Notes: generated by a model not told the origin, from the sequence alone. Positions 11,748 to 37,990 are shown, counted from the stretch's first letter. The stretch: 64,000 nt of DNA from Salpingoeca rosetta (GCA_033442325.1 JAWQFM010000006.1:1749508-1813507); one strand, 5' to 3'. Numbers and translations are program-made.

Positions 11748-14700
11748 TCAGCACATGGACTCCTCGTGGTTTCCCGTGGAGGAAGGGGCTGCCATCCACT
11801 CGTGCGTGCTGGTAAGGTGCGACGCCGCCTGCGACGGTGCCGTGGCCTGTGAGCTGGCAGTTCGCGAAAACGACCCTTGCGATCCGGAGCTCGACACCTC
11901 CATCAGCGGGGAAAGCGGCTGGTTGCGCAGATCCCGCACATACGAGGACGAGCGCTGGCTGCCGGGCCCGGACGACGCCGAATATGACGACGACGCAAAC
12001 GAAGCTGTGGAATCACCGCGCTGCCCATCGTGCCCCTGTTGCTGCTGTTGCTGTTGCTGTTGCTGCTGCTGTTGCTGCGCTTGCTCCTGCTGCTGCATCG
12101 AGTCGCCGTTTGGCCGCACGTGGTCCTGGTGCCCGTGGTCAACCACAACAACATGCTGCTGCTGCTGCTGCTGCTGGGCGGACCCCTTCTTCTTGCTCTT
12201 CTTGTTCTTCGAGTGCTTCTGCTTGCCCTTGCGGTTCACAATTGGCGGGTGCACCTCCACAGATGCGTCCGCTGCCGTGGACGCCGTTGGTGCAGGGCCG
12301 CTGTGCACATCCGCTGCCGTGCCCGCGGTGGCTGGGCTGGGCGGCGATGGTGTCACCGGTGCAGTAGTCAGGTCCTCGTACGAGCCCTCAACAGAGGCAG
12401 ACGACCGCTTGCTGGCTGCCGAGGTGCGCCCGTGCTGCCCGTCGTGGTGGTGGTGGTGCAAGGGGTGCAGCAGCGTCTGGAAGTGGCGCCACAGGCCCCG
12501 ACGAGGCGCAGCATGGCGCAGCTGCACATCTGGCACAACAATCGACGTGTGCTTGTGCATCTGCTTCTTGTGGCTGCGCATGCGCCGTGTTCCGAGCGGT
12601 GCCTTCTCGTGCACTTGCGTGCTTGTGCGCTCAAACGCGTGGCGCGACAGCCGCACCGTGATCTTGTCGCCCAGGTCCGCGCACACCTTCACCACTTCGT
12701 CGAGCGTGGCGTGCTCCAGGTCGTGCCACGTCGTTGCGTTGGTGTTCTTCACCTTGAGCAGCCGCTGACCCGGCTTCACCTTGCCAGAGAGGCGGTCCGA
12801 CGTCACCTCGTCAACAACAAGGCGGCTCACGCGCGTGTTGGGGTCGTACACGTCCGCAAACAGCAAGCCGTAGTTGTCCCCTTCCTTCTGAATGTGCACG
12901 TCGTGGTGCGAGAGGTCGTCCTTCAGCGGCCACATGTGCCGATACATCACGTCCGTCACAATGCGCGTTGGCTTCTTCGACACGTGGCTGGAGCGGCGCC
13001 GCCTGGGTTTCTCCGCGCCCTCACCGCCTGCCGCCGCCTGCATGTCAGCCTCGGTCGGCATGGGCAGCCCTGCGCGCGGGAGCATTGCGCGCACGGGCAC
13101 AAACGTGGGCTTGGCGCGCGGCACGCTGGCGAAGATGCACGGGCGGTGCTTGAACCAGTTGACGTACATGCGCAGGTGGCCATACGACACGGGCCGCTGC
13201 GTGGTTGCGCGCAGCACCACCATGTTGAGCACGTCGCTCTCGGCCGCCATCACCTCCAGCGACTCCAGCGTCAGGTCCTTGCCGTGCTGATCGTTCACCG
13301 CAACAATGCGGTCGCCGCAAAACAGCAAATTCAGCGCAGAGGACCCGGCCTCCACGCCAGAGACATACAGCTCGTGATGGGCCGTCTCAATCACGTCAAA
13401 GCCAAGGCACTCTGCGTTGACGTTGCGGCGCACCTCCACCTCCTTCACAGCGAGCAGCGGGCCCTTGGTGGTACGCGCAGCCATGTCGCTCTTCGACCTG
13501 TGCTTCGTGTGCAGCTTGGGCATTGGGCCTGCGCCCGTGGTGTCGATGCCGGTGGCCTGCTGCATCTCCATCATGTTCATGGCGCCGCCCTCACCAGCAA
13601 CGGGCCGTCGCACCACCAGCTTGATCTGCAGCACGCCCAGGATGATGCGCTCTGCCTCCGCAGCCGTCAGGAACCGCGTGTCCTCGCCGCCAACCAACAG
13701 CACCTCGTCCAAGGGCTGCAGCAGCCGGTGCGCCAGCGAGCCGGCCACCGTGTGCTTGACATAGATCTTCGAGCCCAGCGACGTGAGCGAGAAGCCAAAG
13801 TCCTCGCGGAAGTCCTTGCGCTCCAGCACCACCGTGAACACGTCTCGGCCGGTCGCGGGCATGGGCGGGTACGAGTCGCGGCGGGCGGTGCGGCCATCGC
13901 CACTTTCGCCCTCTGTTCCGCTCTCGCTCGAGCGGCGCATGCTGCCGCCACTGCTGCTGCTGGTGCGGCGGCGGCGGCGGCGACGGTGGCTGCCCTTCTT
14001 CTTCCTGCCACCGGCACCGCTGGTCGATGAACGGCGTGGCCGCGGTGCTCCGCCACCACTGCCATCCAACAACACGCCATCCTCATCGTCCTCGTCCTCC
14101 TCATCATCCTCGTCCTCCTCCTCGTCCTCGTCATCATCCTCGTCATCATACTCCTCATCCTCGTCTTCTTCGTCCTCTTCCTCTTCATCTTCATCTTCCT
14201 CCATGAGGTCACTGAGGCTGCTGCGGGGCGATGCGCGCGGGGTGGATGGTCGCGCCACCCGCCGCCTGTGGTGCCGCTTGCGCCACTTCTTCCGCTCCTG
14301 CGCACGCCGGTGCTGCCAGCTGGCCACCGTGTCTGCGCGGCCACGTGCCTGGCGCCTGGCCAGAGCCACCACCACGTCGGCGTGGCTCGTGATGAACTGC
14401 TTGACGTCCTCGTGTGACCACCCCTTCACGGGCACCTTGTTCACCTCCACAATGCAGTCGCCCTCCTTCAGGCCAAAGTGCTCTGCGATCCCGCCCTCGT
14501 TCACCTTGGTGATGATGTGGCGGCCCTTGTGCGTCGTGCCAAAGGTCAGCCCAAACGGCACGTTGGACGTGCGCTGCAAGTTCACGCGGATCATCTGCAC
14601 GTGCGACTGCTTGCGGCGCTTGTGCGTGAAGAACGCAGCGTGTGCACCGGCAACGTGCTTCAGCAGCTCGTACTGCTCCATGCAGATGTTGGAGTTGGAC

Positions 14701-15994
14701 GTGGCCGTGAGCCAGTGCAGCGGGTTGTCGTCGTCCGCGCCCGGTTCCGGCAGATTAATGTCCTTCATCTCACCCGTCTCGTCGTGGTAGTTGAAGGCCA
14801 CTGTCTCAATCCACGCGTTGTCCGTGTTGCGCGGGTCGTGCAGGAGGCCACGGTACACCTCCAAGATGGCGGCGCGGCTAAGCCGTTCCTTGATCATCTC
14901 TTCCAGCGCTGCCGAGGACAGGCTCGTGCCGCCAGCACCACCGGCACCGCCCTCCGTCGTCGACGCCGCTGCCGCTGCTGCTGACGCTGTTCCAGCCTGT
15001 GTGGCTGTGACGGTCGCGGGTGTGGCTGTTGGCCCGCCTTTGTTCGTGGCGTTGGCGGCGTGCAGCTGCAGGTCCTGGGTGGACACGATGTTGGCCAGCT
15101 TGGACGCGCGCACCGTCTCTGTGCCGACCTTACCGCGGAAGGCAAGCTCAAGCGCACGCTGCATAGCCGTCTGCAGCTCCTCGCCAGGGCGGATGAACAC
15201 GGAGGGGAGGTAGCTGGTGCCTGTGACGCTGTTCTTCAGCGCAAGCACTTCCAGCACGGGGTGTTTGTCCTGCGTCACCACCTGCCCCTTGGAGTTGCGC
15301 TTCCAACGGGAGATGATCATGTGCACGGCGTGGTTTGGACCCCACAGCGCAAACATGCCGCGGCCAGCAACGCCCGTGCGCCCGTACGGGTAGAGGGGGA
15401 GGCCGCGCGGATTGAGGTCGTACAAACCCTCGTAGCTGCGGCGGTCCACCTCGTCGTCGTTGGAGTTGAAGTGGGGCAGGTCGCGGCTTCGCACACGGCC
15501 CTCGGCAATGGCCTGCAGCTCACGGATGTTGGGATCTGCGCGTGGGTGCTTGAGCACATTCGGCGCCGTGTAGAACGGTGGACGGTACACGGACACGGGG
15601 TGGCCCCAGTCTGTGTCGCTTGGCGTCGCACGGCGCACATCCTCCGTGCCAGGGTACATGCCCTCGCACACCCGGCAGGACAGCGTGGGCAGGCCAACGT
15701 CATCCGCTGGCGACTCCTGCTCTTGCTCCTGCAGCTCCTCTTCTTGCTGTTGCTGTTGCTGTTGCTGCTGTTGTTGCTGCTGCTGCTGCTGCTGGTCCAC
15801 TGCAGCATCACCGTACGAGAAGGGTGGAGACGAAGTCGCGGTGGTTGCTTCCGTCGTGGTTGCTTCCGTCGTGGTGGCGGTCGTTGTCTCTGTTGGTGCG
15901 CCGCGTTGCGTCCACTGCCCTGTGGGCGACGTGGCTTCCGCTGCCTGCACCGGGCGAGCTGGTGCTGCTCCGGCATCGTCCACGCTTCTTCGCT

Positions 15995-16025
<31 letters not shown>

Positions 16026-16859
16026 TTGTGACGCGACCATCGCGCCCGTGCTGGCTGCGCCCTGGGAGGAAGAGGCGCTGTACGAGCCATCGAGCATGGG
16101 CGTTGCGCCGTCAATCGGCGCCGGGTGCTGGCGAGCGAGCGCGCCCACCTCGGGCTGCTTCACCACCGTGAGCACAAACGACGGTGGCTGCCGCTGTAGG
16201 AGGCGGCGCACAAGCCCCGCGTTGGCCGTGTGCACGTCAAACTGCCCAATGCGAAGGATGTGGTCGTACTTCTGCAGGCCAGCGCGCTTGGCGGCGCTGT
16301 TGTTGTACACGCGCAAGATAAACGTGCCCTCCTGCGCAGCCGGGTTGGTCTGGATCTCGTTTGGGTCGCAGCTGCCCAGCACAACGCCAATGTCTGCCTC
16401 CACATCTGTTGCCTGCGGGTTTGGGCGTGTCAGTGTGCATTCGCGCGTGGGATACGCCGCAACGTGGGGCTTGAGCTTCATGTCGCTGCGCTTGTACAGG
16501 TCATATGCCTTCGGCTCATGGCGAACGACGAGCGTGACGCGGTCCATCGCCTTGGCCAGCGCCTCCTGCGCATGTGAGACCTTCACTTCCTCCATGGGCC
16601 GGCCGTTGATGGACAGAATGCGGTCGCCCTCGCGCAGGTCGCCGTTGGCGTCGGCGATGGAGTTCGGTAGGATCCTGCCGATGAAGACGGGGGCGCGGCG
16701 GTCCGTTTCGCCCAGCAGGCGCAGGCCAAGGTCCAGGGTGTTTCGCGGCTTGCGAAGGTTCACGCGGCGTGTTTCACCGGTGGAGCGCACCTCAAGCTCC
16801 CGCTCTTGCTGCGCAACGGCAGCGGCCAACCGGTCTGACCCTGCGCACGCGAGCGATGG

Positions 16860-16940
<81 letters not shown>

Positions 16941-19694
16941 TGAGTGAGTGAGTGAGTGCCTCAGTGTCAGAAGAAGAAGAAGGCAAGTGCTCGAGGGAAC
17001 GAAAAAAGGAGGAGCAGGAACAGCAAAGGCAAGGACTACGACAGAAGCGAGGAAGAAGAGGAGCGACTGCGTGCGCGTACCTTGCACGACGTCGGGCACC
17101 GGGGAGGTGTCATCAATGGGCTCGTCGATCTCGCTGCTGTTGCTGCCTGTACCCGCTGTGAACTTGGCGTGGTGGCCGTGTGACGTGCGCACGTCTCCGG
17201 ACACGGCGTCCTCCACGTCAAACGCAGAGGCAGACACGTGTGGGACTGGCATGGAACGGTCACTCATGGGCGTGAGAGGTTCACCAGAGTCCTCTGCGGG
17301 CAGTCGAGGGCTGATGCGAGGCAGGTTGGGGAACTTGTTGAAGTCGGTTTCAAGCGCCAGCACGGGCTTGCTCTGCGTGTCTGCAATGTTGCCTGCAGTC
17401 ACACGCTTCTCACGCTCATCCATGTGCACATGCAAACCTACAGCGCATGTGTGTGTTGGGGGAGGTGAGGAGTGGCACATGGGGTGCGTCGAGGTGGGTA
17501 CGCAACATGCAATATGAAGCGCGGTTGTGCAGGCACTCAACCAGACGCACATGCGAACATGTGGTACGGGAGCATGCACACAGCGAACTAAAATCCCACC
17601 CACCTTTGGGGTTGTAAGCGACTGTGATGACGGCCTGTTGCACAGCGTGCAGCTGGGCAAGCACCTCAACCACGCTCGCCTTTTCCACGCTGCGGCCATT
17701 GAGCGTGAGAATCTGGTCACCAACATGAAGATGGCTCACCTACAAGACGAGAGACGCGGCGGCACATCACAGTGCGTGAGAAGGAAACGACGCTTCTCGT
17801 GTGGGGATGGGTGAAGTAAAAAGGAAAAGGAAAGGGAAAAGGAAAACTCCACCGGATTCTCTGACAGACGCGTATACACACACATACACACAGACAGGCA
17901 CACAAAAGCACACACAGACAGACACAGACACACACACACGCAGACACACAGACACAGACGCAAGATGACATACGCGATCAGCCATGCTCTGTGGCACGAT
18001 GCGGGAGATGAAGACGCCTGTTGGGCGGTACATGTCGACGTAACCGCTGGGGCCGACAATGTCGATGCCAAAGCTGTTGTTCTGGCGCACAAGCTCCGTC
18101 TGCTCGTGGTTGGAACAACATGAGGGGAAGGGGAGGGGTGCGTGTGATGGAGAGTCAATGGAGGCCAGGCAATTCGCGCATGACAAACTGCGCGATAACA
18201 AAGCACAGTCGAACGAACAAACAAGCGAACAAGCCAAACAGGGTGATGGTGCAAACACGCGAACGTTATCATCAAAGCAATCACAACACGCGCAAGTAAA
18301 ACGTGCAAGCGCCACGCGCGCACCTCTCGAACAGACTGCGCAGCGAGGACGGGCGTGTCCTCCTGGCGCGGGGACCAGACAGGGCGATCTGTGGACTGCT
18401 GGCTGGCGGCAGCAGGGGGCGAAGTCGCCTGCTGGGACGACTGGAAGCGCGGTGGCAGCCACGACTCCGTTCGCCGCAGGATGTCAGACTTCATCACCGT
18501 CCGCGTCTGCACAAATATGTGTATGACGTGTTTGTGGCAGGGATTTGTGAGCAGGAGCGAAACTGCTTGGGGGTTACGCAGCGTGACGCACACAGGCTTA
18601 CTGGCAAACAGACTGACAGACACACAAACACACAGAAGCGTAAACGTCCCCAACACCCACCCACCCACCCACCCACCCACCCACACACGTGCGCGCGCAC
18701 ACACACCAGCTTGTATCGTGCGCCAATTTCCTCCTCGTCGGCGTCGATGCGCTGCAGACGGCGGAGCGCATCGACGTGCATGGCGACCTCAAGCTCAACG
18801 TGGTCACGCGCCTTGGATAGGGCTCCAGACACCTGCCGCACACTCCACGAGTGCGCGTCCACGCCGTTGATGCGGAAGATCTGGTCGCCGACGCGTGGCA
18901 GCTCGCTGCCGGGCCCAAGCACCTCCACCGCAGACACAAACACGCCGCTGTGCTCAGCGGGGACAACGCCTACGGAAAGGGTCGCAGCGATTGTGGAAGA
19001 CACGCAACGTGTGCCCATGCGTGAGTTAATGTGTGTGTGCGTGTGTGTGTGTGTTAAGTGTGTGAAGTGTGTGTGTGTGTGAAGTGTTTGTGTGGCGGTG
19101 AGAAGCACTGCTCGCACACGATGATGCACAACACGCGGCAGCCACGACAACGACGACAACACAGCAACAGCCAGGACAAAGTCAGTACGGCTGCAGCATG
19201 ACATGACACGCACGCACCGAGACGCTTCCCGTGACCGGTGAGGCCAATGAGGGAGATGGGGAACTGGCCGTCGACGCGGGCGAGCGTGAGTGTGCGGCGC
19301 GCGCCGAGATGCGACTTGGGGGACGTGCTGCACAGGTCATGTGCGTGCGTGTGTGTTTGTATGTGTTTGCGTATGTGTGTTTGTATGTTTGTGTGTTAAT
19401 GAGCGAGTGGGAAACAACGGATGGAAGTTCAAGAACAAAAGAAAGAAGTGTAGGGATCATACAAGGCATGGTGATAGCAGCAGACATGGGCGGGACACGC
19501 GATGGTGATGGTGACTCACGGGCGCTCTGGGATCTCCTGCTCCCGCGTCAACTTCACGCCAATGCGGTATCTGGTCAGGGCACAAGCACAACACAACATG
19601 AGGGGCAAGGCGAGACAGCAGGGAACGCATTCGATTGCACACAAATAAAACCACGCACAGGGTACAACAAGCGTGAAACACACAAGCAAATGCG

Positions 19695-19725
<31 letters not shown>

Positions 19726-19946
19726 AAAGGGTGCAGCTGTGCGTACTTTGATCGGCCAACGATAAGCGTGACCTCTTGATCACAGGCCTGCAGCTGGCGA
19801 ATCACTTCGGGGAGTGTACAGTTGGACACATCCACACCATTCACGTTCAGTAGGCGGTCAAATTGCCTGTGCATGCAAGCACAAACATGTAGAGAGACGC
19901 CATAGATGTGAGGGAGCAAAGGGGGTGGAATGTGTCATGCAATGCC

Positions 19947-19983
<37 letters not shown>

Positions 19984-20641
19984 GTGCGGCCCATGCAGCG
20001 CACCTCAGTCGCCCATCCCTGTGGGCAAGGCGGTTGGGGATGATGGCACTGATGCGAACACCAGCACGCTTGCCCTGGCAATTCAAAACAAGACGTTTGT
20101 GTGCCATGCACAAGTGATCATCAGTGACAAGGGAGAGTGAGGAGAAGGAATGCACACGGAAATAGTGTGTATGCACGGCCTCAAACGCAAGGTACTAGCA
20201 GCGAAACACCCACGCACACAGACACACAGACACACACACACTACACCCACGCACGCACCTTCTCCGCAGCCTCTGAGATGTTTGACATGGACGAATGCGT
20301 GCTGGAGCGAGAGGAGACGAGGAACCCAAGACCTTCCGTTCCGCACTTGCGCTCCAGCTGTGCAACAACACACGTAGGCGTGAGAGCAACAAACATGGGT
20401 GAATCAGAATGCGCACCAAGGTAGATTTGGAGTGGGAGCGAGCGAGTATGGGTATGGGTCACCGCAGCGTGCATGAAGTGCTTGTGGTTGCGCGCATACC
20501 TGATCCTGGTTGACGGTTGCCCAAGATTCTGTGTCGACCAGCTGGCTCTGACTTCCGCGCGTCTGAGTGGCAGTGCCGTGATGTGCAGTGCATTGGTGAG
20601 CAATGTATCCGACGTGAAGGTGAGCTTGTGATCAAAGCATG

Positions 20642-20737
<96 letters not shown>

Positions 20738-21299
20738 GCTGCAGTCGCCCCGTGAAGGACGGGTCTGCGTCCTCCGTCTGGAACTTGAGCGGACGAAGAA
20801 ACTCCTTTGGCGGCTGTGGCGTTGGGAAACACAAGGGCGAGCGTGGTCCGCGAGAACGGTGTGGTGACGATCATAATTGCAACAAAGTCACAAACACAGT
20901 GGCACGAATAAACCAACGAAAACACACACACACACACACGCACGCACACGGCACACTCACACACACACGCACGCACACGGCACACTCACACACACACGCC
21001 CACACGCACGCACGAGAGCAAACACATACGCAGAGGTCGGAGAAGCGAACATGAACGCACCGTCTCCATGGTGTCCATCATGTCTTCGATCCTGCGCGCA
21101 TTCCGGCACACGGAGCGCCACTGATCTTTTTCAAGGCGCATCACGCACACGTCCACAATGTGCGACACCTGTGGCAAGCGGTGGAGGTGTTGGCGAAGAG
21201 GAGAAGCAACACAAATCCACACATGAATGGGTGTAGGAGAAAGCAGGAGGAGCGAGGAAGGCCGAACAATCAAGAGTCACAGTTCACACACAAACACAA

Positions 21300-21332
<33 letters not shown>

Positions 21333-23415
21333 AACACACAACTCACGGATTGGAGGATGGCCATTGTATCTGCGTATGTGGCGCCGACGAGGCCGATGTT
21401 GTCGATGGAGAGAAGGCGGTCACCGGGCTGCAGTCCAGCAACAGCCGCGCGCGTGTGCGGCATTACCACAGACACAAACGATGCACCATACGGCCTGGTT
21501 TGGGTCGTCAGTAGTTGTCGCCGTGGTGGTGATGGTGGTGTTCGTGAGACAGGGCCATCAAGATGCAAGCATGCACACTCACATGCCTACAAGCAAAAAA
21601 CAAACAAACAAACAAACAAACAAACAAACAAACAAACAAACAAACAAACAAACAAACAAACAAACAAACAAACAAACAAACAAACAAACAAACAAACAAA
21701 CAAACAAACAAACAAACAAACAAACACGCAAAGGTGCCCTAACAAACAAACAACCAACCAAACACACACACACACACAAACAACCAACCAAACACACACA
21801 CAAACAAACAAACAACCAGCCAAACAACCAACCAGCCAAACAAACAAACAAACAAACAAACAAACAAACAAACAAACAAACAAACAAACAAACAAACAAA
21901 CAAACAAACAAACAAACAAACAAACAAACAAACAAAGCAAGCTTACGTTTCGCAGCCGCCGATGACCTGGAAGCCGAGAATGCCGCCTGGTTCGTGCTCG
22001 TACGGGACAATGATCACCTCGCCGCTCGTCGGTATCAGGTCGAACAGCTGCCCGCCTTTGTTCTGGCGCGCTCCCTGCACGTGTGTGAGTGGATGTGCGT
22101 GAGAGAGATAGTGTGTGTATGTGTGTGTGAATGTGTGTACAGGTGTAAAATCAAAGGAAAGCGAGGCAGAGAGAGAGAGAGAGAGACATGTTGGAGCATT
22201 TTTCGAGGGAAGACGCAGGGCTGGCATGGCGGTTGCATGCATGCAAGCACGTACCGCGACTTGTGATTGCTTCTGTCTTGTTTCCATGCGCCTGTATGCC
22301 TTTGTCGTCAAAAAGTCATGCAGTTGCGCCCTGCAAACCCACACATGCATGAGGGAAGAGACCATTGTTGAGCAGTGGAAGAACGGGGCAACATGGGGTG
22401 CATGCAAGCAATGCAGGGACATGGAGTGCATGCACACAATGCCATGCAAAAAGGCGAGCAATGGAGCAAACAGCAGCAAATGTGAAGGCGCACACACCTG
22501 TTGGCGTCGATAATCCCATAAGCAGAGCTGACCTGTAGCATGCAAAGGCATGCGAACAGGGTGTTAGAATGCAGGCAAGCATGTGTATACGAGGACCAAC
22601 AAGGTGCAGACACTGGAGCACGTGCTACCCACACAAACATAATCACAAATGAATGCACACGCACACACAAACACACAGGAGTACACACATAAACACACAC
22701 ACACACGAGTCCACACGAGTACACGCAACAGAACTGACCCTGTGCAGGGAGTTGGAGCTGTGCAGCTGCTGTGAGAGCGGCATTGACTCTGGCACGGGCG
22801 ACGTCGTCTCACTGCGCGAGCGCATGCGGTGGACGTGTCCACGCTGCTGCTGCAACGACGACGACGACGATGATGGCAGCTGGTGTGACGAGCGCCGGTT
22901 TGGTGCGTTGGACAGGCGGGCGGACAGCTCTCGCATGTCGACACCGCCGCGTGGCCGCAGGTGCTGAGGGAGACTCGACACACGCGTGAGACCACGTTGC
23001 TGTTGCTGCTGTTGCTGCTGCTGGTGACGTGGCTGCCACTGTTGCCACGGTTGCCACTGCTGCCTGCGAGCATCATCACCAAGTGTATCGGCAGCGGGCG
23101 GGGCCGGGGTGGCTGTTGCAGTGGTGGCGGCCGTGAATGACGGCGATGTAACGCTGGCGGTTGTCGCTGCTGTCTCTGCGAGCCCATCCTGCGGCCACTG
23201 CGCCTGGCGTTGCTCGTACTCTGTCTCGGGGAAGCTTCCAGAGCGCATGTGGCCCTGCTGCAGCGCTGCCGTCACAGGCACGTGTTCGGCGCCCTCCATC
23301 GCTTGCTTGGCCGCAGACGATTCCCTGTCGACCACAAACCCTTCATACTGTGGCTGCTGGTGCTGGTGCTCGTATTGCTGGTGGTATTGTTGTGGCTGCT
23401 GCTGCTGTTGGTAGT

Positions 23416-23484
<69 letters not shown>

Positions 23485-24211
23485 GATAGTGTGTGTTGTG
23501 GTGCGTGTCGGCGCTGGCTGGGGTGATGGCGGTGGGCTTGAACACGGGCGGCAGCTGCTCACCTGCGGGCAGGCGGCGCGCCTGGGCCATGGTCGCATCG
23601 GACACTGCACTCGACCCGTGCACCTCCTGCAGCGGGGCCGCGTGCGTGCGAGCTGCGGATGATGGCGGCGATGGCAGGCGATGGTGGTGGTGGTGCCCGT
23701 TGGGATGGGGGTGACGAGAGTGGGGTGGCGCTGTCTCTGTTGGTGGCGGGGCCGGCAGGCGGCGGCGGGCCGATCGCGGTGACAGCGGCTGCTGGTGCTG
23801 CACGGGCTGCTGGTGCTGCACGGGCTGCTGGTGCTGTAGTTGTGCGGTAGGGAGCACTGCCCCAAGGTCGTGCGCGGGCGCCCCAAAGTCCACCGTGCGC
23901 AACGCTGCACTCGTTGGTGGCGGCGAGGACCCATGCTGATCCATGCGCTCGATGTCGTGGCGCGTGGCGGTGGCGGTGTCGCCGCTGGCATCTGTCACGG
24001 TGAGCTCAAGCTTGGTGGTATGTGACATGAGGTTGTCCAGTAGCTCGGCGGTGAAGGCGGCAGTTGGCAGGCCGTTGATGGCAACGACGCGGTCGCCCAC
24101 ACGCAGGCCCGGGTTGGACGACACCGTGACGATGATGCCGTCATCTGTGTGGGTGAGCTGACACGGCCACGCGCCATCAGGTGCGCAGTTGATGCTGACA
24201 CTTCTTGTCAT
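11748..24211 (-). CDS. Very large multi-PDZ (~11 PDZ) scaffold with an internal NUDT9-homology (ADP-ribose pyrophosphatase-like) domain; 5' exon structure approximate
   Basis: PDZ signatures (GLGF-like loop plus GDRI/GDQI-x3-NG) at about 23990-24205, 21150-22020, 19755-20360, 18780-18970, 17605-18100, 16520-16765, 16160-16440, 14355-14590, 13605-13840, 13210-13445 and 12645-12900. NUDT9 motifs GRTGVAGRG...WGPNHA...ISRWKR and DPRNTDNAWIET..NYHDETG at ~14625-15680. The last ~5.1 kb is one open exon. Confidence 0.8.
14625..15680 (-). other. NUDT9-homology domain with a degenerate Nudix box
   Basis: Matches NUDT9 along its length (YPG, ADP, P-x-FN, GRTG..GRG..WGPNHA, DPRNTDNAW). The Nudix box reads PSVFIRPGEELQTAMQRALELAF (~15138-15207) instead of PGGMVDPGE...LKREFGEEA. 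Confidence 0.85.
21595..21936. repeat. (CAAA)n tetranucleotide microsatellite in an intron of the PDZ gene
   Basis: Two long perfect CAAA runs seen directly. Confidence 0.95.
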
Positions 24212-31190: not shown

Positions 31191-31233
31191 CTACAGCAGC
31201 ACACACATCTTCGACTTTGGCGCAGCAAGCGAC

Positions 31234-31321
<88 letters not shown>

Positions 31322-31529
31322 GCCACTGCTGAAACCGCTTCATCAGCAGCGCCGCCGGTGCCAGACGAATACCGGCTGCATGCAGGGACTCGCATGACAC
31401 CTGACCAGACTCTACGAGGATGGCGAGCAGGTCAAAGCTGACCACACCAAGGTGCAGGAATGTGGCGTGGACGTGTGAATACAGCTTGCTTGATTCAAGC
31501 CACGCCTTGAACTCTGGGTCAAACTGTGG

Positions 31530-31627
<98 letters not shown>

Positions 31628-34252
31628 GCAGTGGTGCCTGCGCGGAACATGGACAGAGGAGAATGACAGGATACAAAGGAGCTATGGCGTGAGTGATGGG
31701 GTATGAACATGCACACACGCAGGCACACACAGGCACACACAGGCACACACAGGCACACACAGGCACGCACGTGCGTCCTCACCCTCTGCACGCCGGTATC
31801 CCGTGCAGACGCCACGACCGTGCGAATGGTGTCTGCGTGCACGCGCAGCTGCTGTGCACGATCACCACCAGCAGCGCCAAACTCAACCACGGCGTCGATA
31901 TCAAACAGCGCCAGCACAGCCGCTCGTACCGTGGCGTGCTGCTGTGGTGGCGGCACGTGCAGCACTTGCGTGAAGTACTGGTCAAGGGCTGTGGCTGTCG
32001 CTTTGCTGACAACATCTGGCAAGGTCATCGCCAGCTCGCGAATGCCATGCAGCGAGTCACCTGCAGTCTCGTTGGCAGCGGTACGGTCACCGGCTGTGCT
32101 GTGGCTGTTGTGCCACGCGCGACCCACAAACATGGGCACAACACGACGCAGACGAATCGTGCCAGCGAGCTGATGTGCCCGGGACTGCAGTGCCAGCATC
32201 GTCATCCACTCCAGCAGCACGTTGTCGCAGTAATCGTCTTCGTTCAGTGTCTGCATGCGCGCAAGAGCACCCGCAGAGACAATGGGGCAGGCCACCAGGC
32301 TCAGCCCAATCGCCGTCATGAACGACAGCTTAAAGTTGAGGCCCGTCTCCAGGTTGTTGGCATCCAGGAACGCGACCAGGTTGCGCTGCTCCAACAAGGG
32401 ATGCAGCGCCATCACCAGCCCGCTGTTGGCGCGTTGCCTGTGGTGAACGTATTGTGGTGATGGAGGTTGACGTGAGGAGGGGAAGTTGTGGTGGTAGGTT
32501 GCAGCGACACACACACACATACACATACACATACACATACACACGCAATACACATACACATACACATACACGCGCAATACACACACACACAACTCACCTG
32601 TAGCTGATGAAGACGTCGTACTTGTCCTGCAGACCGAGAACGGGCAAGAGAGAGCCGTACTTGGCGACCAGATCATCGAGCGACAGCAGCTGTTCGTCCA
32701 CCCACATGTCCTGCTTGCTCTTGTGGTGGTGCAGCACATCCTCAAAGAACAGCAGCGTCTTGTCGTCAAATGGCACCAACAGGCTGCTCTTCAGCTCGGG
32801 GTAGCGCCGGTGAACGGCTTGGCGCACTGTGCTATGCAGCATGTGCAGCATGGCGCGCGGCTGCGCGCTCGTGATCTTCATTTTGATGCCGCCAACAGCC
32901 GGCACAAGCTGCAGCTCAAGCTTAGTCGACTCCATGAAGCAAACAGCGTGGGTGCGGCTCAGCTTGGGCGCCTGAGATGCGCCGTGCTGCGCATGCGCCA
33001 TCACGTGGGCCAGCACCACCGTGAACAGTCCTTCGGGCAGGAAGGTCGCGTGCTTGATTCCAGCAACTTGCACGCTCGCAGCCTTCTTGAACTGCTTCAG
33101 GCTGAAAGCCACGTAGGCCGTCTTCTCCTCGTGTCCAGCGTATGGGTTGGCCTGCTGTGCTGCTGTTGTGCTCAGCGACACGGATGCCATGGTGCTGGTA
33201 TTGTGACAAATCGTCATCGGCAGGATGGCAGGGACCAGGTACTGCTGTTCTTGCTCTGTTGTGTCGGTTTTGACACTGGCGTTGTCTACTGCTGCACCGT
33301 GGCCGGCATGGCCGCTACTCGCTGTAGTGTCGCCACCCACCAGCTTGGGTGGAGAATACTCAATGCACAGCCCGTACTGCATCATGAGGCGCAGGAACGG
33401 CATCACCAAGTTGCTGTGCACGTCGTTCCACAGCACGTCCAGCAGGCGGCGGTGCAGAATGCCACAGTCAACGAGGTCGTCCCACAGCTGCGCACCAACG
33501 GCCCTCGCCTCGCTATCCCGCACGTCGTGATGCAGGTCGAAGTTGCGGATGACGCGCGTCATCGTGTCCACCGCCCACTGCGGGCTCAGGATCACATAAT
33601 CTTCCATGCCTGGCACGTGGTCGTAGTACAGGACCATGGAATACAGGTGCAGGAACTGGAGGCAGGCCCGTGTCTCGTCACGCGTGCGCAGCCCACACGT
33701 GCACGCAATGTCCACCACCTCGTCAAACGTCAGCAGCGGCCGTTTGTCGTCCTTGCTCAGTGCCATCAGTTTGTCGTAGAGATGGAGGTAGGGGACAGCC
33801 ACTTCCTGGTTCACGTACTCCTGCGCCAGTGCTGTGGAGGAGATCGTCTGGCGCAGGTCCTGGATCATGGGATCACGGATGGACTTGGTGTTGTCGACGG
33901 GCCAGAACCACAGACCATGCTTGTCGTTGTGGACGACGCCAGGGAAAGCGGGGTTGTGCCGCAGGCGGCTGTAGATGTCACGGGAGATGGCCTCATGCTG
34001 TTTCCGCTGGCTGACCACATCAGCAAAGGTGCCAACGATGAGGACGGGTGCGCCCTTGGCGTGGAGGTGAAGGGAGGAGAGCCAGTGCTCCATAAACTCC
34101 CACGTCTCATCTCGCTTGCTCTCGTCTTGGTGCAGCAGGTCCTCCATGGAAAACACCAGCAGGTACACCGCGTACCTGTTGGGTGGGGGAGCAAAAGGGT
34201 GGGGATGTGGTGAGGGTGTCAGGTGAGGGAAGGTGTGGCGGTGGACAGGAGG

Positions 34253-34323
<71 letters not shown>

Positions 34324-34853
34324 TACACGCACACAACTTGGACTCACTCTGTGAGGAAGAAAGGGTGGAAGATGTAGAAGGTGGACTGGCCGCCCAGGTC
34401 AAATACTTTGAACGTGACCCGCGCGTTTTCTTCACCGATGGTCGCGTCCAAATTGAGGTCTTTGATCGCCTTCTCCAACTCTTCGTCCACCACAGCTTGC
34501 GCAACAGCACCCGTTGTTCCTTCCGCTTGCTCACCACCACCATCGCTATTGTGTTTGTCAGACAACGGGCGAGTTGAGTCACCTTGCTTCACGTGCGCAC
34601 TCGCGGTGGATGCACCAACTGCCGCGTCGTTATCTGCATGCAACAAACCCAGACCACCACACACTTCACTGCCATCATCGCCACCCTCATCTGTGCCTTC
34701 ATGCCCTGCATCAGCTCTGCCATCTTCATCGCGCGCTTCCCTCTTCAGCCGTTGCTTGTGCGCGTGCAGCCGCTGTGCGAGCGCCGTGTCTCTCAGACTC
34801 CGCGCCGCCTCTGAGATGTTCGCCGTCACCGCCTGATAGGGAGAGACAGAGAC

Positions 34854-34921
<68 letters not shown>

Positions 34922-35908
34922 TGTGTGTGTGTGTGTGTGTGTCTGTGTGTGCAGTGAAGGTCGCGGCGCCACCGTTTCAACACCCCCTTCTCAAACAGAC
35001 TTCTTGACAACACCTGAAACAAAGCAGGTAGGAGTGAACAGCAGCGCACCTTCCACTGGCAAATCTCCATCGCGTCGAGGGTGACAGCCATGTCCTGGCT
35101 CGCGGCACCAAGGGTGGAGTGCTGGCTCTTGTTGAAGTCTTGCTCCATCAGCGATTGCAGCGTCGTCGTCTTGCCTGCTCGGCCCTCGCCCACAAGCATG
35201 AGCTTGGCCCGTGCCGCCATCTGCATGTCTCCTCTCTCCGCGATGGTACGCATCATCGCCTTCACTTCACTGAAGTAGCGAAGCGTTGCCTGCAAGCAGC
35301 ACGTGCAGCGAGTGCAACATGGACATGTCAGCCAGACAGTGAACACAAGCATTCGTCCCGGCAGATGTGTTCACGTTCACAATGGAGAGGGTGTGTGTGT
35401 GCGTGTGTGTGTGTGTGTGTGTGTGCGTGTGTGTGTGTGTGTTGCAAACAGACAGACAGACACACTGAAAGACAAAGAGACAGACACACTGAAAGACAAA
35501 GAAACAGACTCACAGACAACGTGCCCCCCCCCACACACACACACACATACACGCACACCCAGGAGTACAGGGCATCATACTCACGTCCTGCTCCTGTTCG
35601 TCTTCGTCGTCATCGGCATCAGCAATCCCGGGCTCGGCGTTGTTGAAGCGCCGCTGAAATGCTTCCTGCTCGCGGTCAGACCTGGCACATGGTATTGTGG
35701 CGACGGTGGTGGTGGTGGTGGTGGTGGTGGTGAATGAGTGGCATCAGACACACGCACACACATGTACGACATACATACATGGCTTCAGATACGCACCCCA
35801 CACTCACCAGCTGAGTTGGATGTTGCGGTCTGGCGGGAGATGCGCAGCAAACGCCTGCGCCACTTTGCGTCCATTCACTCGAAGCCTGTGCAAAGGGGAG
35901 GGGGGTTG

Positions 35909-35975
<67 letters not shown>

Positions 35976-36476
35976 GGGCAGAACGCAGCAGCGAGGCACA
36001 AGCATGGTCTGAAGAGTTGCGTACCGAAGAGTCTCCAGCGTTGAGTTTTCCTTCAACGCCTTTGCCAGTTCCGCGCCGCTTTTGGCGTTGAGTTTGCACT
36101 TGGACAGGCTGCAGTTGGACAGCAAGCAGCGACCATGGTGATGGCAATCCACATACAGGCGTGCGTGCGTGCGTGTGCGTGCGCGTGAGCACTTACAACA
36201 GTTTGCATGGTGCGTCCAAACGTGTGCTTGCGCGAGCCGGCACAATCTACCACACGACACACCACCGACATCGTATTGACTCTTTTGAAACACGTACTCG
36301 AGCAGCTTGAGGGCGGTGTTGGAGCGCAGCATGTCGGCCAGCGCCAGGGCACCGGCAGCACCGACCGAGTTGTTCTCCAACCTGCACCCGCCCACAGGCA
36401 AGATCACATGCGCAAAGCAAATGCTGGTCACCTCGTAGCACATCAAAGACAGGGAGGGACAGAGACAAACAGACAA

Positions 36477-36516
<40 letters not shown>

Positions 36517-36533
36517 ACAGATGGAGAGAGACA

Positions 36534-36594
<61 letters not shown>

Positions 36595-36833
36595 GCTGGC
36601 TGACTGACACACCTAACACGCATTTACGCACGGCCACATCCAAAAGCACATTCACACATACACGAGAGCCTCGAGTGGTGACGTTCGGAGGGCGTCCGCA
36701 AGCATGGCGACACCTTGACCTGTCAGGTTGTTCTGCTTCAGGCTGGATGGACGAACATGTGAATGGCTCATGAGCTACAGATTGGTGTACACATGGACAC
36801 GGAGAGAAAGGGAGACACACACACAGGCACAAG

Positions 36834-36911
<78 letters not shown>

Positions 36912-37086
36912 CGTACTTGACGGATTGAAGAGTGTGGTTGCTGGAGAGCATTCGGACCAAATCGCCTGCAGCGTCATCTGAGATGCGATTCCCCCACAGC
37001 CTGCACCACATCCATGGGATGGGTTACAAGAGAGCATGTGTGCAGATAAGCAGGACTCATGTGGCCAATCACACACACACACACAC

Positions 37087-37132
<46 letters not shown>

Positions 37133-37139
37133 CACACAG

Positions 37140-37203
<64 letters not shown>

Positions 37204-37990
37204 CCCGAGTTTCTGGACGGTCTTGTTTGTCTGCAGAACCTTTGCAATCGCCTTGACCCCTTGATCGCCGATGGAGCTCATGCTCATGCTGATATCACAC
37301 ACAAGTCCGAGAAGCGGCAACATGTCAAGGGGTGAGGCAACACACTCATATGTGCGTATGCAGCCAGATGGATTGGTTCCAGCAGGGTGGCGCTGTCTGG
37401 CACACGGAGAGGCTGAACGACAGCCAGCAAAAGCCAGTGGCGTGTGCACTTGTGTCTGTGAGTGTGCTGCACACGTACTAGAGCTTGGTGACGGATGCGT
37501 TGGCCTTCATGGCCTCGGCCACGCACTTTGCGCCATGGACCCCGAGGCGGAGGCCAATGAAACTGTAAACCGATCAAGCAGGCAAGAGGGCAAGCAAAGC
37601 AGGCGTGCAGCAGTGGCAGCACAGTTGTCAGTGGCAGCACAGTTGTCGGCGGTGACATCACACTTTCAAGTCTGAGCAGCAAGCAGCAAGCAGCAAGCAG
37701 ATCGGCGAGGATGCGGCTCAACGCAAAAGTCGCTCGTTCAATCGATCCAAGCTCACATTGCATCACACCCCTTTCCCCCCCCCTCTCTCTCTCTTCCTTG
37801 GCACTTGATGCTCTCATCCAATATCCAACTCATTCGCAGCTCACTCTGCCGTGTCGCCGCATGTGTTGTCTGCGATGGACAGGATCTTGTTCTTCACCAC
37901 ATCTGTGAGCTTCCCCTTGTCAAGTAAGGCCCTGAGATCCTTCTTGAACAGCGAGTCAGAGGTTGACACGGCATTGGTGGTGCTTGTCAT
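31191..37990 (-). CDS. ROCO protein: RI-like LRRs, ROC GTPase, COR, TIR, SAM-like domain, CaaX
   Basis: 28-aa RI/NLRC3-type LRRs (35808-37562). ROC P-loop KLMLVGEGRAGKTT (~35167-35190), G3 FDLGGQ and G4 IVGTFAD. COR region (~32650-33880). TIR YDVFISYR|Q...AFLD...DNVLLEW (~31850-32625). SAM-like FKAWLESSKLYSHVHATFLHLGVVSFDLL. Ends PKSKMCVLL* (TAG at 31193-31191). Confidence 0.88.

What the first reader, a model, noticed from the sequence alone, without database searches (positions are those of the whole stretch)
11748..24211. Multi-PDZ scaffold with a built-in, probably catalytically dead NUDT9-homology domain: candidate ADP-ribose-sensing scaffold
Seen: a complete NUDT9-like domain (~14625-15680) lies in frame within one exon, between PDZ7 and PDZ8 of about 11 PDZ domains. 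It keeps the ADPR-pocket motifs (GRTG..GRG..WGPNHA, ISRW, DPRNTDNAW). The Nudix box has lost the GG and the REFGEE glutamates (PSVFIRPGE...MQRALELAF). Known: NUDT9 is a standalone ADPR hydrolase. The best-known NUDT9H fusion is TRPM2, where vertebrates lost the catalytic glutamates and use the domain to bind ADPR. Inference: this is an independent enzyme-to-sensor conversion on a cortical PDZ scaffold rather than a channel. I do not recognise this architecture from characterised proteins.
Basis: partly seen in the sequence, partly recalled or inferred. Interest (0 to 1): 0.85.

Follow-up and report, generated by a model that had tools for sequence, protein, structure and literature searches.

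The report
Multi-PDZ scaffold carrying dead NUDT9 domain
A choanoflagellate (Salpingoeca rosetta) gene encodes a giant scaffold protein of eleven PDZ domains with a catalytically dead copy of the ADP-ribose-cleaving enzyme NUDT9 built into it. The combination is conserved in several choanoflagellates and apparently undescribed. It may link NAD-derived signals to protein scaffolding.

Summary
On the minus strand, a 5.1-kb terminal exon (16840-11748) encodes PDZ6-PDZ7-NUDT9H-PDZ8-PDZ11 in one frame. Stranded RNA-seq covers it without internal splice joints. The genome is Salpingoeca rosetta.

The inserted domain matches human NUDT9 (E 1e-41) and folds like it (pLDDT 84). All three REUXEE glutamates and the GG of the Nudix motif are gone, so ADPR hydrolysis is very unlikely.

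At least ten related proteins share the architecture, including ones from Monosiga brevicollis (A9V3B6, uncharacterised), Choanoeca flexa and Salpingoeca infusionum. In the seven aligned, the dead box is fixed. NUDT9H is also their best-conserved module.

The pocket is remodelled rather than simply kept. D-x-R of DPRNTDNAW and the adenine-stacking Phe remain. The stacking Trp, ribose-binding Asp, another Asp/Glu and the LYASH Tyr/His are fixed as Arg, His, Arg, Cys/Gln.

My best reading (about 0.5) is a metal-independent binding module for ADPR or a related nucleotide. A ligand-free interaction module is the main rival.

Independence from vertebrate TRPM2 rests on orthology logic, because the domain tree cannot exclude their grouping (AU p 0.63). 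I found no paper describing it. I rate it a new variant of a known kind.

The parts
11748..16840 (-). Terminal exon (5,093 nt including the stop codon) encoding PDZ6, PDZ7, NUDT9H and PDZ8-PDZ11 in one frame
   Evidence: Continuous stranded RNA-seq depth with no joints from 12200 to 16800. The acceptor CAG at 16843-16841 was deduced from the loose end at 17080 that matches 16828-16839.
14630..15695 (-). NUDT9-homology domain (cap plus Nudix-fold core), 355 aa
   Evidence: phmmer against human NUDT9 gives E 1.2e-41. AF2 model has pLDDT 84.1 and pTM 0.80. Foldseek top hit is 1qvj NUDT9, E 2e-23, TM 0.75.
15132..15209 (-). Degenerate Nudix motif LPSVFIRPGE..RALELAFRG. The GG became SV, the Asp/Glu before PGE became Arg, and REFGEE became RALELA.
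   Evidence: Alignments to NUDT9 and TRPM2. Column counts against 51 enzyme-type sequences.
14907..15131 (-). Family-specific insert after the Nudix helix. It begins with the conserved G-x-x-G-(T/A) turn and continues as a low-complexity, disordered stretch.
   Evidence: pLDDT is below 50 for domain residues 218-253. G188 and G191 are invariant in 7 of 7 members, and the rest is variable.
14811..14837 (-). DPRNTDNAW motif. The Asp and Arg equal srTRPM2 D1426/R1428 and hsTRPM2 D1431/R1433, which contact ADPR.
   Evidence: mapping to srTRPM2 numbering. Papers 10.1101/2023.03.16.533055 and PMC6759353.
15321..15383 (-). GRTG..GRG..WGPNHAVH block. The final His replaces the ribose-binding Asp (srTRPM2 D1330).
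15531..15551 (-). KHPRADP. Arg replaces the adenine-stacking Trp (srTRPM2 W1264).
14355..14603 (-). PDZ8, joined to NUDT9H by a roughly 10-residue basic linker. It is the best-conserved PDZ of the family, and its GWSH motif is conserved across the family.
   Evidence: PDZ HMM 1.5e-25. Family alignment. Mean pairwise identity 39.5%.
16518..16781 (-). PDZ6
   Evidence: PDZ HMM 2e-22. Pfam PDZ best stretch. DLG4 PDZ3 7e-18.
16158..16451 (-). PDZ7 (with a loop insertion)
   Evidence: PDZ HMM 2e-16.
13602..13847 (-). PDZ9
   Evidence: PDZ HMM 5e-18.
13209..13448 (-). PDZ10
   Evidence: PDZ HMM 2e-19.
12642..12905 (-). PDZ11, divergent
   Evidence: The HMM hit is weak (E 0.14 over the six-frame fragment set, 8e-4 against the single model protein). 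AF2 pLDDT 78.8, with Foldseek hits to GRIP1, SAP97 and MPDZ PDZ domains at TM about 0.7.
17081..17437 (-). Linker exon (no domain)
   Evidence: RNA-seq joint 17435/17602, a transcript contig, and the loose end at 17080. GT..AG boundaries read from the sequence.
17604..17739 (-). Exon with the C-terminal half of PDZ5
   Evidence: Joint and contig. PDZ HMM positions 47-85. Boundaries.
17974..18099 (-). Exon with the N-terminal half of PDZ5. It is spliced to an upstream exon that ends at 18326.
   Evidence: The loose end at 18101 (18 reads in run X22) matches 18326 onward. PDZ HMM positions 9-46.
18782..19332 (-). PDZ4, split over two exons (about 19327-19218 and 18969-18705 in the provisional model)
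   Evidence: PDZ HMM 1.4e-11. tblastn of the S. infusionum orthologue is collinear. Exon ends come from my own splice model only.
19752..20372 (-). PDZ3, split over three exons
   Evidence: PDZ HMM fragments. tblastn with P0002. Provisional model.
21344..22044 (-). PDZ2, split over exons
   Evidence: PDZ HMM 1.6e-9. tblastn with P0002 residues 248-381.
22643..24211 (-). Putative first exon ORF, with the start codon at 24211, PDZ1 (24115-23993) and a long poly-Q/low-complexity linker. Its membership in the same transcript was not verified.
   Evidence: ORF. PDZ HMM 1.9e-8. Pfam PDZ_6 is weak.

Best explanation
This is an expressed Salpingoeca rosetta gene for a scaffold of about 2,900 aa with eleven PDZ folds. 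A complete NUDT9-homology domain sits between PDZ7 and PDZ8. Shown: the domain has the NUDT9 fold but lacks every Mg-binding glutamate and the GG of the Nudix motif, so it is a pseudoenzyme. The same dead box and the same architecture are fixed in an orthologous family across craspedid choanoflagellates. NUDT9H, followed by the directly attached PDZ8, is the most conserved part of the protein. Inferred: the former active site is remodelled rather than decayed. Five acidic enzyme positions became His, Arg, Ala, Leu and Ala, and the stacking Trp became Arg, all invariant, while the D-x-R pair and the stacking Phe are kept. The most likely mechanism is that protein cations replace the lost Mg ions, so the domain binds but does not cleave an anionic NAD-derived nucleotide. 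That ligand could be ADPR itself or a close relative such as 2'-deoxy-ADPR or a phosphorylated ADPR. Occupancy would then change what the scaffold, and PDZ8 first of all, holds together. Sub-odds: architecture real 0.97; catalytically dead 0.9; ligand-binding module 0.55; ligand is ADPR itself about 0.35.
For: One transcribed exon is shown. The dead box combines both published inactivating lesions (PMC6461439), and those Nudix-box mutations leave ADPR affinity of nvNUDT9-H largely intact (same paper). Family members are P0001, P0002 (S. infusionum), P0024, P0025, P0026 (C. flexa), P0027 (M. brevicollis A9V3B6) and P0178-P0180, all PDZ plus NUDT9_N without a NUDIX Pfam hit. Forty-four positions are shared with the enzymes. 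Twelve switched positions are fixed in 6-7 of 7 members, and most lie at known ligand or metal contacts (10.1101/2023.03.16.533055; PMC6759353). NUDT9H mean pairwise identity is 46-50%, against 23-40% for the PDZ domains. The NUDT9H-PDZ8 linker is short and conserved in all members. The family is monophyletic (96/87) and its internal branching groups S. rosetta with S. infusionum and M. brevicollis with C. flexa.
Against: No binding data exist. Neither known adenine sandwich is intact: for the srTRPM2 type only the Phe of Trp+Phe is kept, and for the hsTRPM2 type only the Asp of Tyr+Asp is kept. The ribose-binding Asp is replaced. The related RasGAP/RhoGAP-fused NUDT9H domains have lost even the D-x-R arginine, which shows that this fold can persist without the canonical site. 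I could not inspect pocket geometry because no model coordinates were available. The NUDT9H-PDZ8 co-fold gave no answer. The 5' third of the gene model is not read-verified.
Confidence: 0.5

Rival explanations
1. The NUDT9H domain is a ligand-free protein-protein interaction or structural module. The old pocket surface would be conserved because it docks a partner protein, for example another NUDT9-H domain of the many S. rosetta TRPM2-type channels, or PDZ8 itself.
For: Known ADPR contacts are replaced (Trp to Arg, Asp to His, Tyr to Cys). Other choanoflagellate-type fusions (RasGAP-NUDT9H-RhoGAP; NUDT9H-PTB-kinase) have even more eroded sites. srTRPM2 NUDT9-H modules tetramerise (abstract of 10.1101/2023.03.16.533055). 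The Nudix clan includes non-enzymatic protein-interaction members (PMC5389931 abstract).
Against: The switched residues are invariant and sit exactly at nucleotide and metal contact positions. They turn an acidic metal site into a basic one next to the retained D-x-R and Phe, which looks like a phosphate-binding design. Forty-four enzyme-shared positions, including GRTG/GRG/WGPNHA/NTDNAW, stay fixed.
Confidence: 0.3
2. The domain is still a hydrolase. It would use non-canonical residues, or cleave a different substrate.
For: An acidic residue at the position of the catalytic base (srTRPM2 D1460) is present in the S. rosetta, S. infusionum, C. flexa and M. brevicollis copies. The PGE glutamate of the Nudix motif is kept in 7 of 7.
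Against: All three REUXEE glutamates are Ala, Leu and Ala in the family. Either the first-Glu or the last-two-Glu lesion alone abolishes NUDT9 or nvNUDT9-H activity (PMC6461439). The base position is Ser, Gly or a gap in other members. No Pfam NUDIX hit is seen, unlike enzyme-type relatives.
Confidence: 0.05
3. The fusion is an artefact: two genes, an assembly join, or a decaying pseudogene read as one ORF.
For: The upstream exons above 18326 were joined by my own splice model, not by reads.
Against: There is one uninterrupted frame of about 1,700 codons. Strand-specific RNA-seq is continuous in three runs with no internal joints. The same architecture appears in independent transcriptomes and genomes of other species.
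Confidence: 0.02

Closest known systems
Vertebrate TRPM2 NUDT9-H domain (non-catalytic ADPR-binding domain of an ion channel)
   Same: Both are NUDT9 fold fused into a larger signalling protein. Both have lost the Mg-coordinating Nudix glutamate, the stacking Trp and the ribose-binding Asp (Tyr or His in vertebrates, His here). Both keep the D-x-R pair (10.1101/2023.03.16.533055; PMC6759353).
   Different: The host protein is a soluble multi-PDZ scaffold, not a channel, and the domain is internal rather than C-terminal. All three box glutamates and the GG are lost. The human-type stacking Tyr is Cys. Extra Arg residues and a Gly-rich insert are present. It occurs in choanoflagellates, whose own TRPM2 NUDT9-H is an active enzyme.
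NUDT9 (mitochondrial ADP-ribose pyrophosphatase); S. rosetta has its own canonical copy on contig C20
   Same: This is the best sequence and fold match (E 1e-41; 1qvj TM 0.75). Cap plus core organisation is the same, and 44 conserved positions are shared.
   Different: NUDT9 is a stand-alone enzyme with REFGEE. Here the box reads RALELA and the domain is embedded in a scaffold.
Invertebrate and choanoflagellate TRPM2 chanzymes (srTRPM2, nvTRPM2)
   Same: They occur in the same organism (srTRPM2 lies on contig C13 of this genome, 100% match to PDB 8sr7) and have the same domain type.
   Different: Their NUDT9-H keeps REFMEE/AEFGEE and hydrolyses ADPR (PMC6461439). They form a separate, well-supported clade in the tree (not re-examined in the careful tree).
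Animal multi-PDZ scaffolds (MPDZ/MUPP1, PATJ/InaD-like, GRIP, PDZD2)
   Same: They also have ten or more canonical PDZ domains on one chain. Individual PDZ domains here hit DLG4, LIN7, InaD-like and MPDZ best.
   Different: No L27 domain was found, no orthology is evident, and none of the animal proteins returned by my searches carries a Nudix or NUDT9 domain.
NrtR-type bacterial regulators (catalytically inactive ADPR-pyrophosphatase-like Nudix domain used as an ADPR sensor); cited from my own knowledge, not tested here
   Same: The concept is the same: an ADPRase-like Nudix domain that has lost catalysis serves as an effector-binding module for an output domain.
   Different: NrtR belongs to a different Nudix subfamily, is bacterial, and its output is a winged-helix DNA-binding domain.
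Other degenerate-NUDT9H fusions found here (RasGAP-NUDT9H-RhoGAP-PH in Acanthoeca spectabilis and an MMETSP sample; PTP-RasGAP-NUDT9H-RhoGAP-SH2-PH; NUDT9H-PTB-tyrosine kinase)
   Same: These are dead NUDT9H domains inserted in signalling proteins. They group loosely with the PDZ family in the tree.
   Different: The partners differ. Their sites are more eroded (the D-x-R Arg is Leu in the GAP type). All are uncharacterised.

Membership tests
NUDT9 / NUDT9-homology domain (structural family) | Significant sequence similarity across both the N-terminal cap and the Nudix-fold core | tested here: met
   Human NUDT9 E 1.2e-41 in two stretches covering query residues 13-181 and 257-349. The relatives carry precomputed Pfam NUDT9_N.
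NUDT9 / NUDT9-homology domain (structural family) | NUDT9-type three-dimensional fold | tested here: met
   AF2 pLDDT 84.1 and pTM 0.80. Foldseek gives 1qvj E 2e-23 and TM 0.75, followed by srTRPM2 and hsTRPM2 NUDT9-H.
Active Nudix ADPR pyrophosphatases | Nudix box GX5EX7REUXEEXGU with the REUXEE glutamates | tested here: not met
   The box reads RALELA. E181A, E184L and E185A are found in 6-7 of 7 family members, against Glu in 41-47 of 51 enzyme-type sequences. The GG became SV.
Active Nudix ADPR pyrophosphatases | Mg-dependent hydrolysis of ADPR to AMP and ribose-5-phosphate | not testable with these tools
   This needs an enzyme assay. Published RILGEE and REFGKK mutants are inactive (PMC6461439).
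TRPM2-type NUDT9-H | C-terminal domain of a TRPM channel (SLOG/MHR, TRPM2 domain, ion-transport domain upstream) | tested here: not met
   Only PDZ domains flank it. TRPM2-like relatives show LSDAT, TRPM2 and Ion_trans Pfam hits, which this gene lacks.
TRPM2-type NUDT9-H | Phylogenetic placement inside the TRPM2 NUDT9-H clades | tested here: inconclusive
   The free careful tree puts the PDZ family (96/87) apart from vertebrate TRPM2, and the quick tree put it apart from the S. rosetta TRPM2-type clade. However, an AU test does not reject PDZ family plus vertebrate TRPM2 as one clade (p 0.63).
Non-catalytic ADPR sensor domains | Binding of ADPR without turnover | not testable with these tools
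   Only residue mapping was possible. D-x-R and Phe are kept. The Trp, Asp and Tyr contacts are replaced.
MPDZ/PATJ-type multi-PDZ scaffolds | N-terminal L27 domain followed by 10-13 PDZ domains | tested here: not met
   Eleven PDZ folds were found, but there is no L27 hit in the 5' ORF or elsewhere. Animal InaD-like and MPDZ hits carry PF09045, and this family does not.

The most novel reading that the evidence does not exclude
Choanoflagellates use a catalytically dead NUDT9 domain as a portable reader of an NAD-derived second messenger. In this scaffold, nucleotide occupancy would switch the attached PDZ8, and so the composition of a PDZ-organised complex. Sister fusions would place the same reader on Ras/Rho GAPs, a tyrosine phosphatase and a tyrosine kinase. 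This would be a nucleotide-gated scaffolding system in the closest relatives of animals. It would run in parallel to the TRPM2 chanzymes of the same cell and perhaps talk to them.
Probability: 0.2. Interest if true: 0.85.

Novelty: new variant of a known kind. Interest (0 to 1): 0.62.

Why it matters
Vertebrate TRPM2 is the textbook case of a NUDT9 enzyme turned into an ADPR-binding module. This family would be a second, far older and independent case, on a completely different output: a PDZ scaffold.

The same positions change in both cases (Trp lost, Asp to His/Tyr, first Glu to a hydrophobic residue). That gives a natural replicate for asking how an ADPRase becomes a binder.

It also points to ADPR or NAD-metabolite signalling in choanoflagellates beyond channels. 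S. rosetta is genetically tractable, and its NUDT9-H domains are already purified and solved, so the hypothesis is directly testable. If the domain binds nothing, it is still a clean example of a conserved pseudoenzyme module in a pre-metazoan scaffold.

Tried and rejected
- **Pfam scan of the domain.** It gave nothing. The local copy lacks the NUDT9_N model and the Nudix box is too degenerate. This does not argue against homology.
- **Word-indexed protein search.** It missed most family members. The exhaustive HMMER search and a second search seeded with the M. brevicollis protein found them.
- **S. rosetta's own protein record.** It was never returned.
- **Complex prediction on NUDT9H + PDZ8 with ADP-ribose riding along.** No verdict (score 0.00). 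This counts neither for nor against binding.
- **AU test of 'PDZ family + vertebrate TRPM2 = one clade'.** I hoped to reject it. It was not rejected (p 0.63), and the constrained tree was slightly better than the free search. I therefore dropped the tree as proof of independent origin. I did not repeat the test with the active-site columns removed.
- **My dynamic-programming splice model for 24211-18326.** The first run skipped PDZ3. The second was guided by PDZ hits.
- **Second degenerate NUDT9-H of S. rosetta on contig C5.** I suspected a GAP fusion. It is the C-terminus of a TRPM2-like gene instead.
- **Pocket geometry and electrostatics.** These could not be computed because model coordinates are not exposed.

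Full report
**Observation.** The minus strand carries a 1992-codon open frame at 11748-17726. Residues 678-1032 of it (window 15695-14630) match human NUDT9 at E 1.2e-41. They also match the NUDT9-H domains of Nematostella, human and Salpingoeca rosetta TRPM2 at 6e-35 to 1e-24. Pfam finds PDZ domains on both sides in the same frame.

**Organism.** The window lies on contig C6 of a 55.4-Mb assembly. An exon on contig C13 is 100% identical to the S. rosetta TRPM2 chanzyme of PDB 8sr7. Two other paralogues are identical to named S. rosetta ATCC 50818 proteins. The genome is therefore Salpingoeca rosetta.

**Gene structure and expression.**
- Three stranded RNA-seq runs cover 12200-16800 continuously on the strand expected for a minus-strand gene. 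They show no splice joints inside that stretch.
- Reads and sequence fix these exons: 16840-11748 (terminal), 17437-17081, 17739-17604 and 18099-17974, plus a junction to an exon ending at 18326. All introns are GT..AG.
- The intron 17080-16841 is 240 nt long and in frame. That is why the raw ORF seems to start at 17726.
- PDZ6, PDZ7, NUDT9H and PDZ8-11 are therefore encoded by one 5.1-kb exon of one mRNA.
- A PDZ profile built from the family finds five more PDZ domains in upstream exons. These are collinear with the S. infusionum orthologue.
- The eleventh PDZ (12905-12642) is too divergent for the profile. It folds as a PDZ (pLDDT 78.8) and matches GRIP1, DLG and MPDZ PDZ domains.
- A provisional full model has 2,879 residues and 11 PDZ domains, with NUDT9H between PDZ7 and PDZ8. 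Its 5' third is not read-verified.

**The domain is a pseudoenzyme.** An AlphaFold model built on a 59-sequence alignment has pLDDT 84 and pTM 0.80. It matches the NUDT9 crystal structure first (E 2e-23, TM 0.75), then the TRPM2 NUDT9-H domains. A roughly 75-residue insert after the Nudix helix is disordered. The Nudix motif reads LPSVFIRPGE...RALELA against PGGMVDPGE...REFGEE. NUDT9 with RILGEE or REFGKK, and nvNUDT9-H with the equivalent changes, are inactive. Those box mutations leave ADPR affinity largely intact (PMC6461439). Both lesions are present here at once.

**The pocket is remodelled, not simply kept.** I mapped the domain onto srTRPM2 numbering and took contact residues from two papers. 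For srTRPM2 (10.1101/2023.03.16.533055), W1264 and F1372 stack the adenine, D1330, D1426 and R1428 hold the ribose and phosphate, E1386 and E1390 bind Mg, and D1460 is the base. For hsTRPM2 (PMC6759353), Y1485 and D1431 stack the adenine and R1433 holds the alpha-phosphate. The table compares seven family members with 51 enzyme-type sequences.

| Position (srTRPM2 equivalent) | Enzyme-type sequences | PDZ family |
|---|---|---|
| 52 (W1264, adenine stacking) | Trp/Tyr | Arg, 7/7 |
| 125 (D1330, ribose) | Asp | His, 7/7 |
| 166 (second Gly of GG) | Gly | Val, 7/7 |
| 169 (before PGE) | Asp/Glu | Arg, 7/7 |
| 181, 184, 185 (E1386, E1389, E1390) | Glu | Ala, Leu, Ala |
| 338 (hsTRPM2 Y1485) | Tyr/Phe | Cys, 6/7 |
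| 341 | His | Gln, 7/7 |
| D1426/R1428 (D-x-R) | kept | kept |
| F1372 | Met in most (35/51), Phe in 8/51 (including srTRPM2) | Phe, 7/7 |

Forty-four other positions are shared with the enzymes. A new G-x-x-G-(T/A) turn directly after the Nudix helix is invariant. Five acidic positions that serve metal and ribose binding in the enzymes have been replaced by basic or neutral residues and then frozen. My inference is that protein cations took the place of Mg. That fits metal-independent binding of an anionic nucleotide better than it fits a decayed site.

**A conserved family.** Exhaustive HMMER over 1.84 billion representatives gives six long proteins and one fragment at 202-462 bits. The next hits, at 147 bits and below, are ordinary NUDT9 enzymes.
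- All of the long proteins carry PDZ domains on both sides of the domain.
- Named members are Monosiga brevicollis A9V3B6 / MONBRDRAFT_37693 (2,600 aa, 'PDZ domain-containing protein'), Choanoeca flexa and Salpingoeca infusionum. Three more unnamed members appeared.
- NUDT9H is the best-conserved module (46-50% mean pairwise identity). PDZ8 follows at 39.5%, and the other PDZ domains have 23-35%.
- PDZ8 always starts about ten residues after the NUDT9H C-terminal helix.

**Phylogeny and independence.** In the careful ML tree the PDZ family is one clade (96/87). Inside it, the S. rosetta copy groups with S. infusionum and the M. brevicollis copy with C. flexa. It sits in a weakly supported group with other degenerate NUDT9H fusions. 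In the quick tree that group was apart from the S. rosetta TRPM2-type clade (96) and the vertebrate TRPM2 clade (100).

However, an AU test does not reject a tree that forces the PDZ family and vertebrate TRPM2 together (constrained tree 9 lnL units better, p 0.63). The deep branching is unresolved. Shared substitutions at the dead site, or long branches, may pull the two groups together. Independence therefore rests on a different argument. Vertebrate TRPM2 lost its box within the TRPM2 lineage, because invertebrate and choanoflagellate TRPM2 keep canonical, active boxes (PMC6461439). The PDZ family is known only from choanoflagellates. I consider independence very likely (about 0.9), but it is inferred, not shown by the tree.

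**Mechanism and rivals.**
- Best reading (0.5): a non-catalytic nucleotide-binding module for ADPR or a close relative, coupled to the scaffold and most directly to PDZ8.
- Main rival (0.3): a ligand-free protein-interaction module. In its favour, neither known adenine sandwich is intact, and the GAP-fused relatives have lost even the D-x-R arginine.
- Residual enzyme activity (0.05) and a fusion artefact (0.02) are unlikely.
- A co-fold of NUDT9H with PDZ8 gave no verdict.

**Comparison and novelty.** In function it most resembles vertebrate TRPM2 NUDT9-H, with partly convergent substitutions. It is not a TRPM2-type domain by context. It is a NUDT9-fold domain but not an active Nudix hydrolase. 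The scaffold resembles MPDZ and PATJ only in having many PDZ domains, and no L27 domain was found. Full-text searches for PDZ with NUDT9, for the M. brevicollis accessions, and for Nudix fusions in choanoflagellate signalling found no description. The M. brevicollis protein is in public databases as uncharacterised, so the architecture is retrievable but unstudied. I rate it a new variant of a known kind, with interest 0.62.

**Related note from the scan.** The scan has separately noted a PTP-NUDT9H-RhoGAP-PH fusion elsewhere in this genome (s1-436337). That agrees with the GAP-type fusions I found in other species.

Noticed in passing
window 14803-14837: About 300-375 RNA-seq reads per run pile up on a 35-nt stretch (the DPRNTDNAWIE codons) with loose ends on both sides. 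The loose ends translate to AVVAYK|GYVDD. These reads therefore appear to come from the spliced mRNA of the canonical NUDT9 gene (contig C20, locus L008, REFGEE box), which shares 35 identical bases. This suggests canonical NUDT9 is much more highly expressed than the scaffold.
   Followed up: partly
L002, L003, L006 (contig C13, three copies within 30 kb), L004 (C36), L005 (C4): S. rosetta carries at least five TRPM2-type NUDT9-H exons. L006 is srTRPM2 itself. L005 (F2U348, annotated as 'ADP-ribose pyrophosphatase', 1442 aa) has RKFLEE instead of REFMEE. The Mg-binding first Glu is Lys, so this paralogue may also be catalytically impaired.
   Followed up: partly
L007 / L009 (contig C5, about 1853680-1859495): Another NUDT9-H has a degenerate box (KALLKNEAL), Arg at the stacking-Trp position and an acidic insert. 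It lies downstream of a TRPM2-like domain hit, so it appears to be the C-terminus of a TRPM2-like gene. This may be a separate loss of catalysis inside a choanoflagellate channel. The next gene is a sugar transporter.
   Followed up: partly
proteins P0137, P0161/P0174, P0109, P0136 (not in the window): Degenerate NUDT9H domains are also embedded in RasGAP-NUDT9H-RhoGAP-PH (Acanthoeca spectabilis and an MMETSP sample), in PTP-RasGAP-NUDT9H-RhoGAP-SH2-PH, and in NUDT9H-PTB-tyrosine kinase proteins. I found no paper describing them.
   Followed up: partly
window 16841-17080: This in-frame 240-nt intron contains a (CA)n microsatellite that translates as a (TH)n run. Because it has no stop codon, the mechanical ORF runs through it and through the next exon up to 17726.
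   Followed up: yes
window 14076-14204 and 15993-16028: There is a 43-residue pure Asp/Glu tract between PDZ8 and PDZ9. Poly-Gln tracts lie in the PDZ7-NUDT9H linker. RNA-seq reads appear cut at these repeats.
   Followed up: no
window 31191-37990: Another first-stage note places a candidate TIR-domain NADase (LRR-ROC-COR-TIR-SAM) about 7 kb from this gene. A TIR NADase would make ADPR-type products, so the proximity is worth remembering. It may well be coincidence.
   Followed up: no
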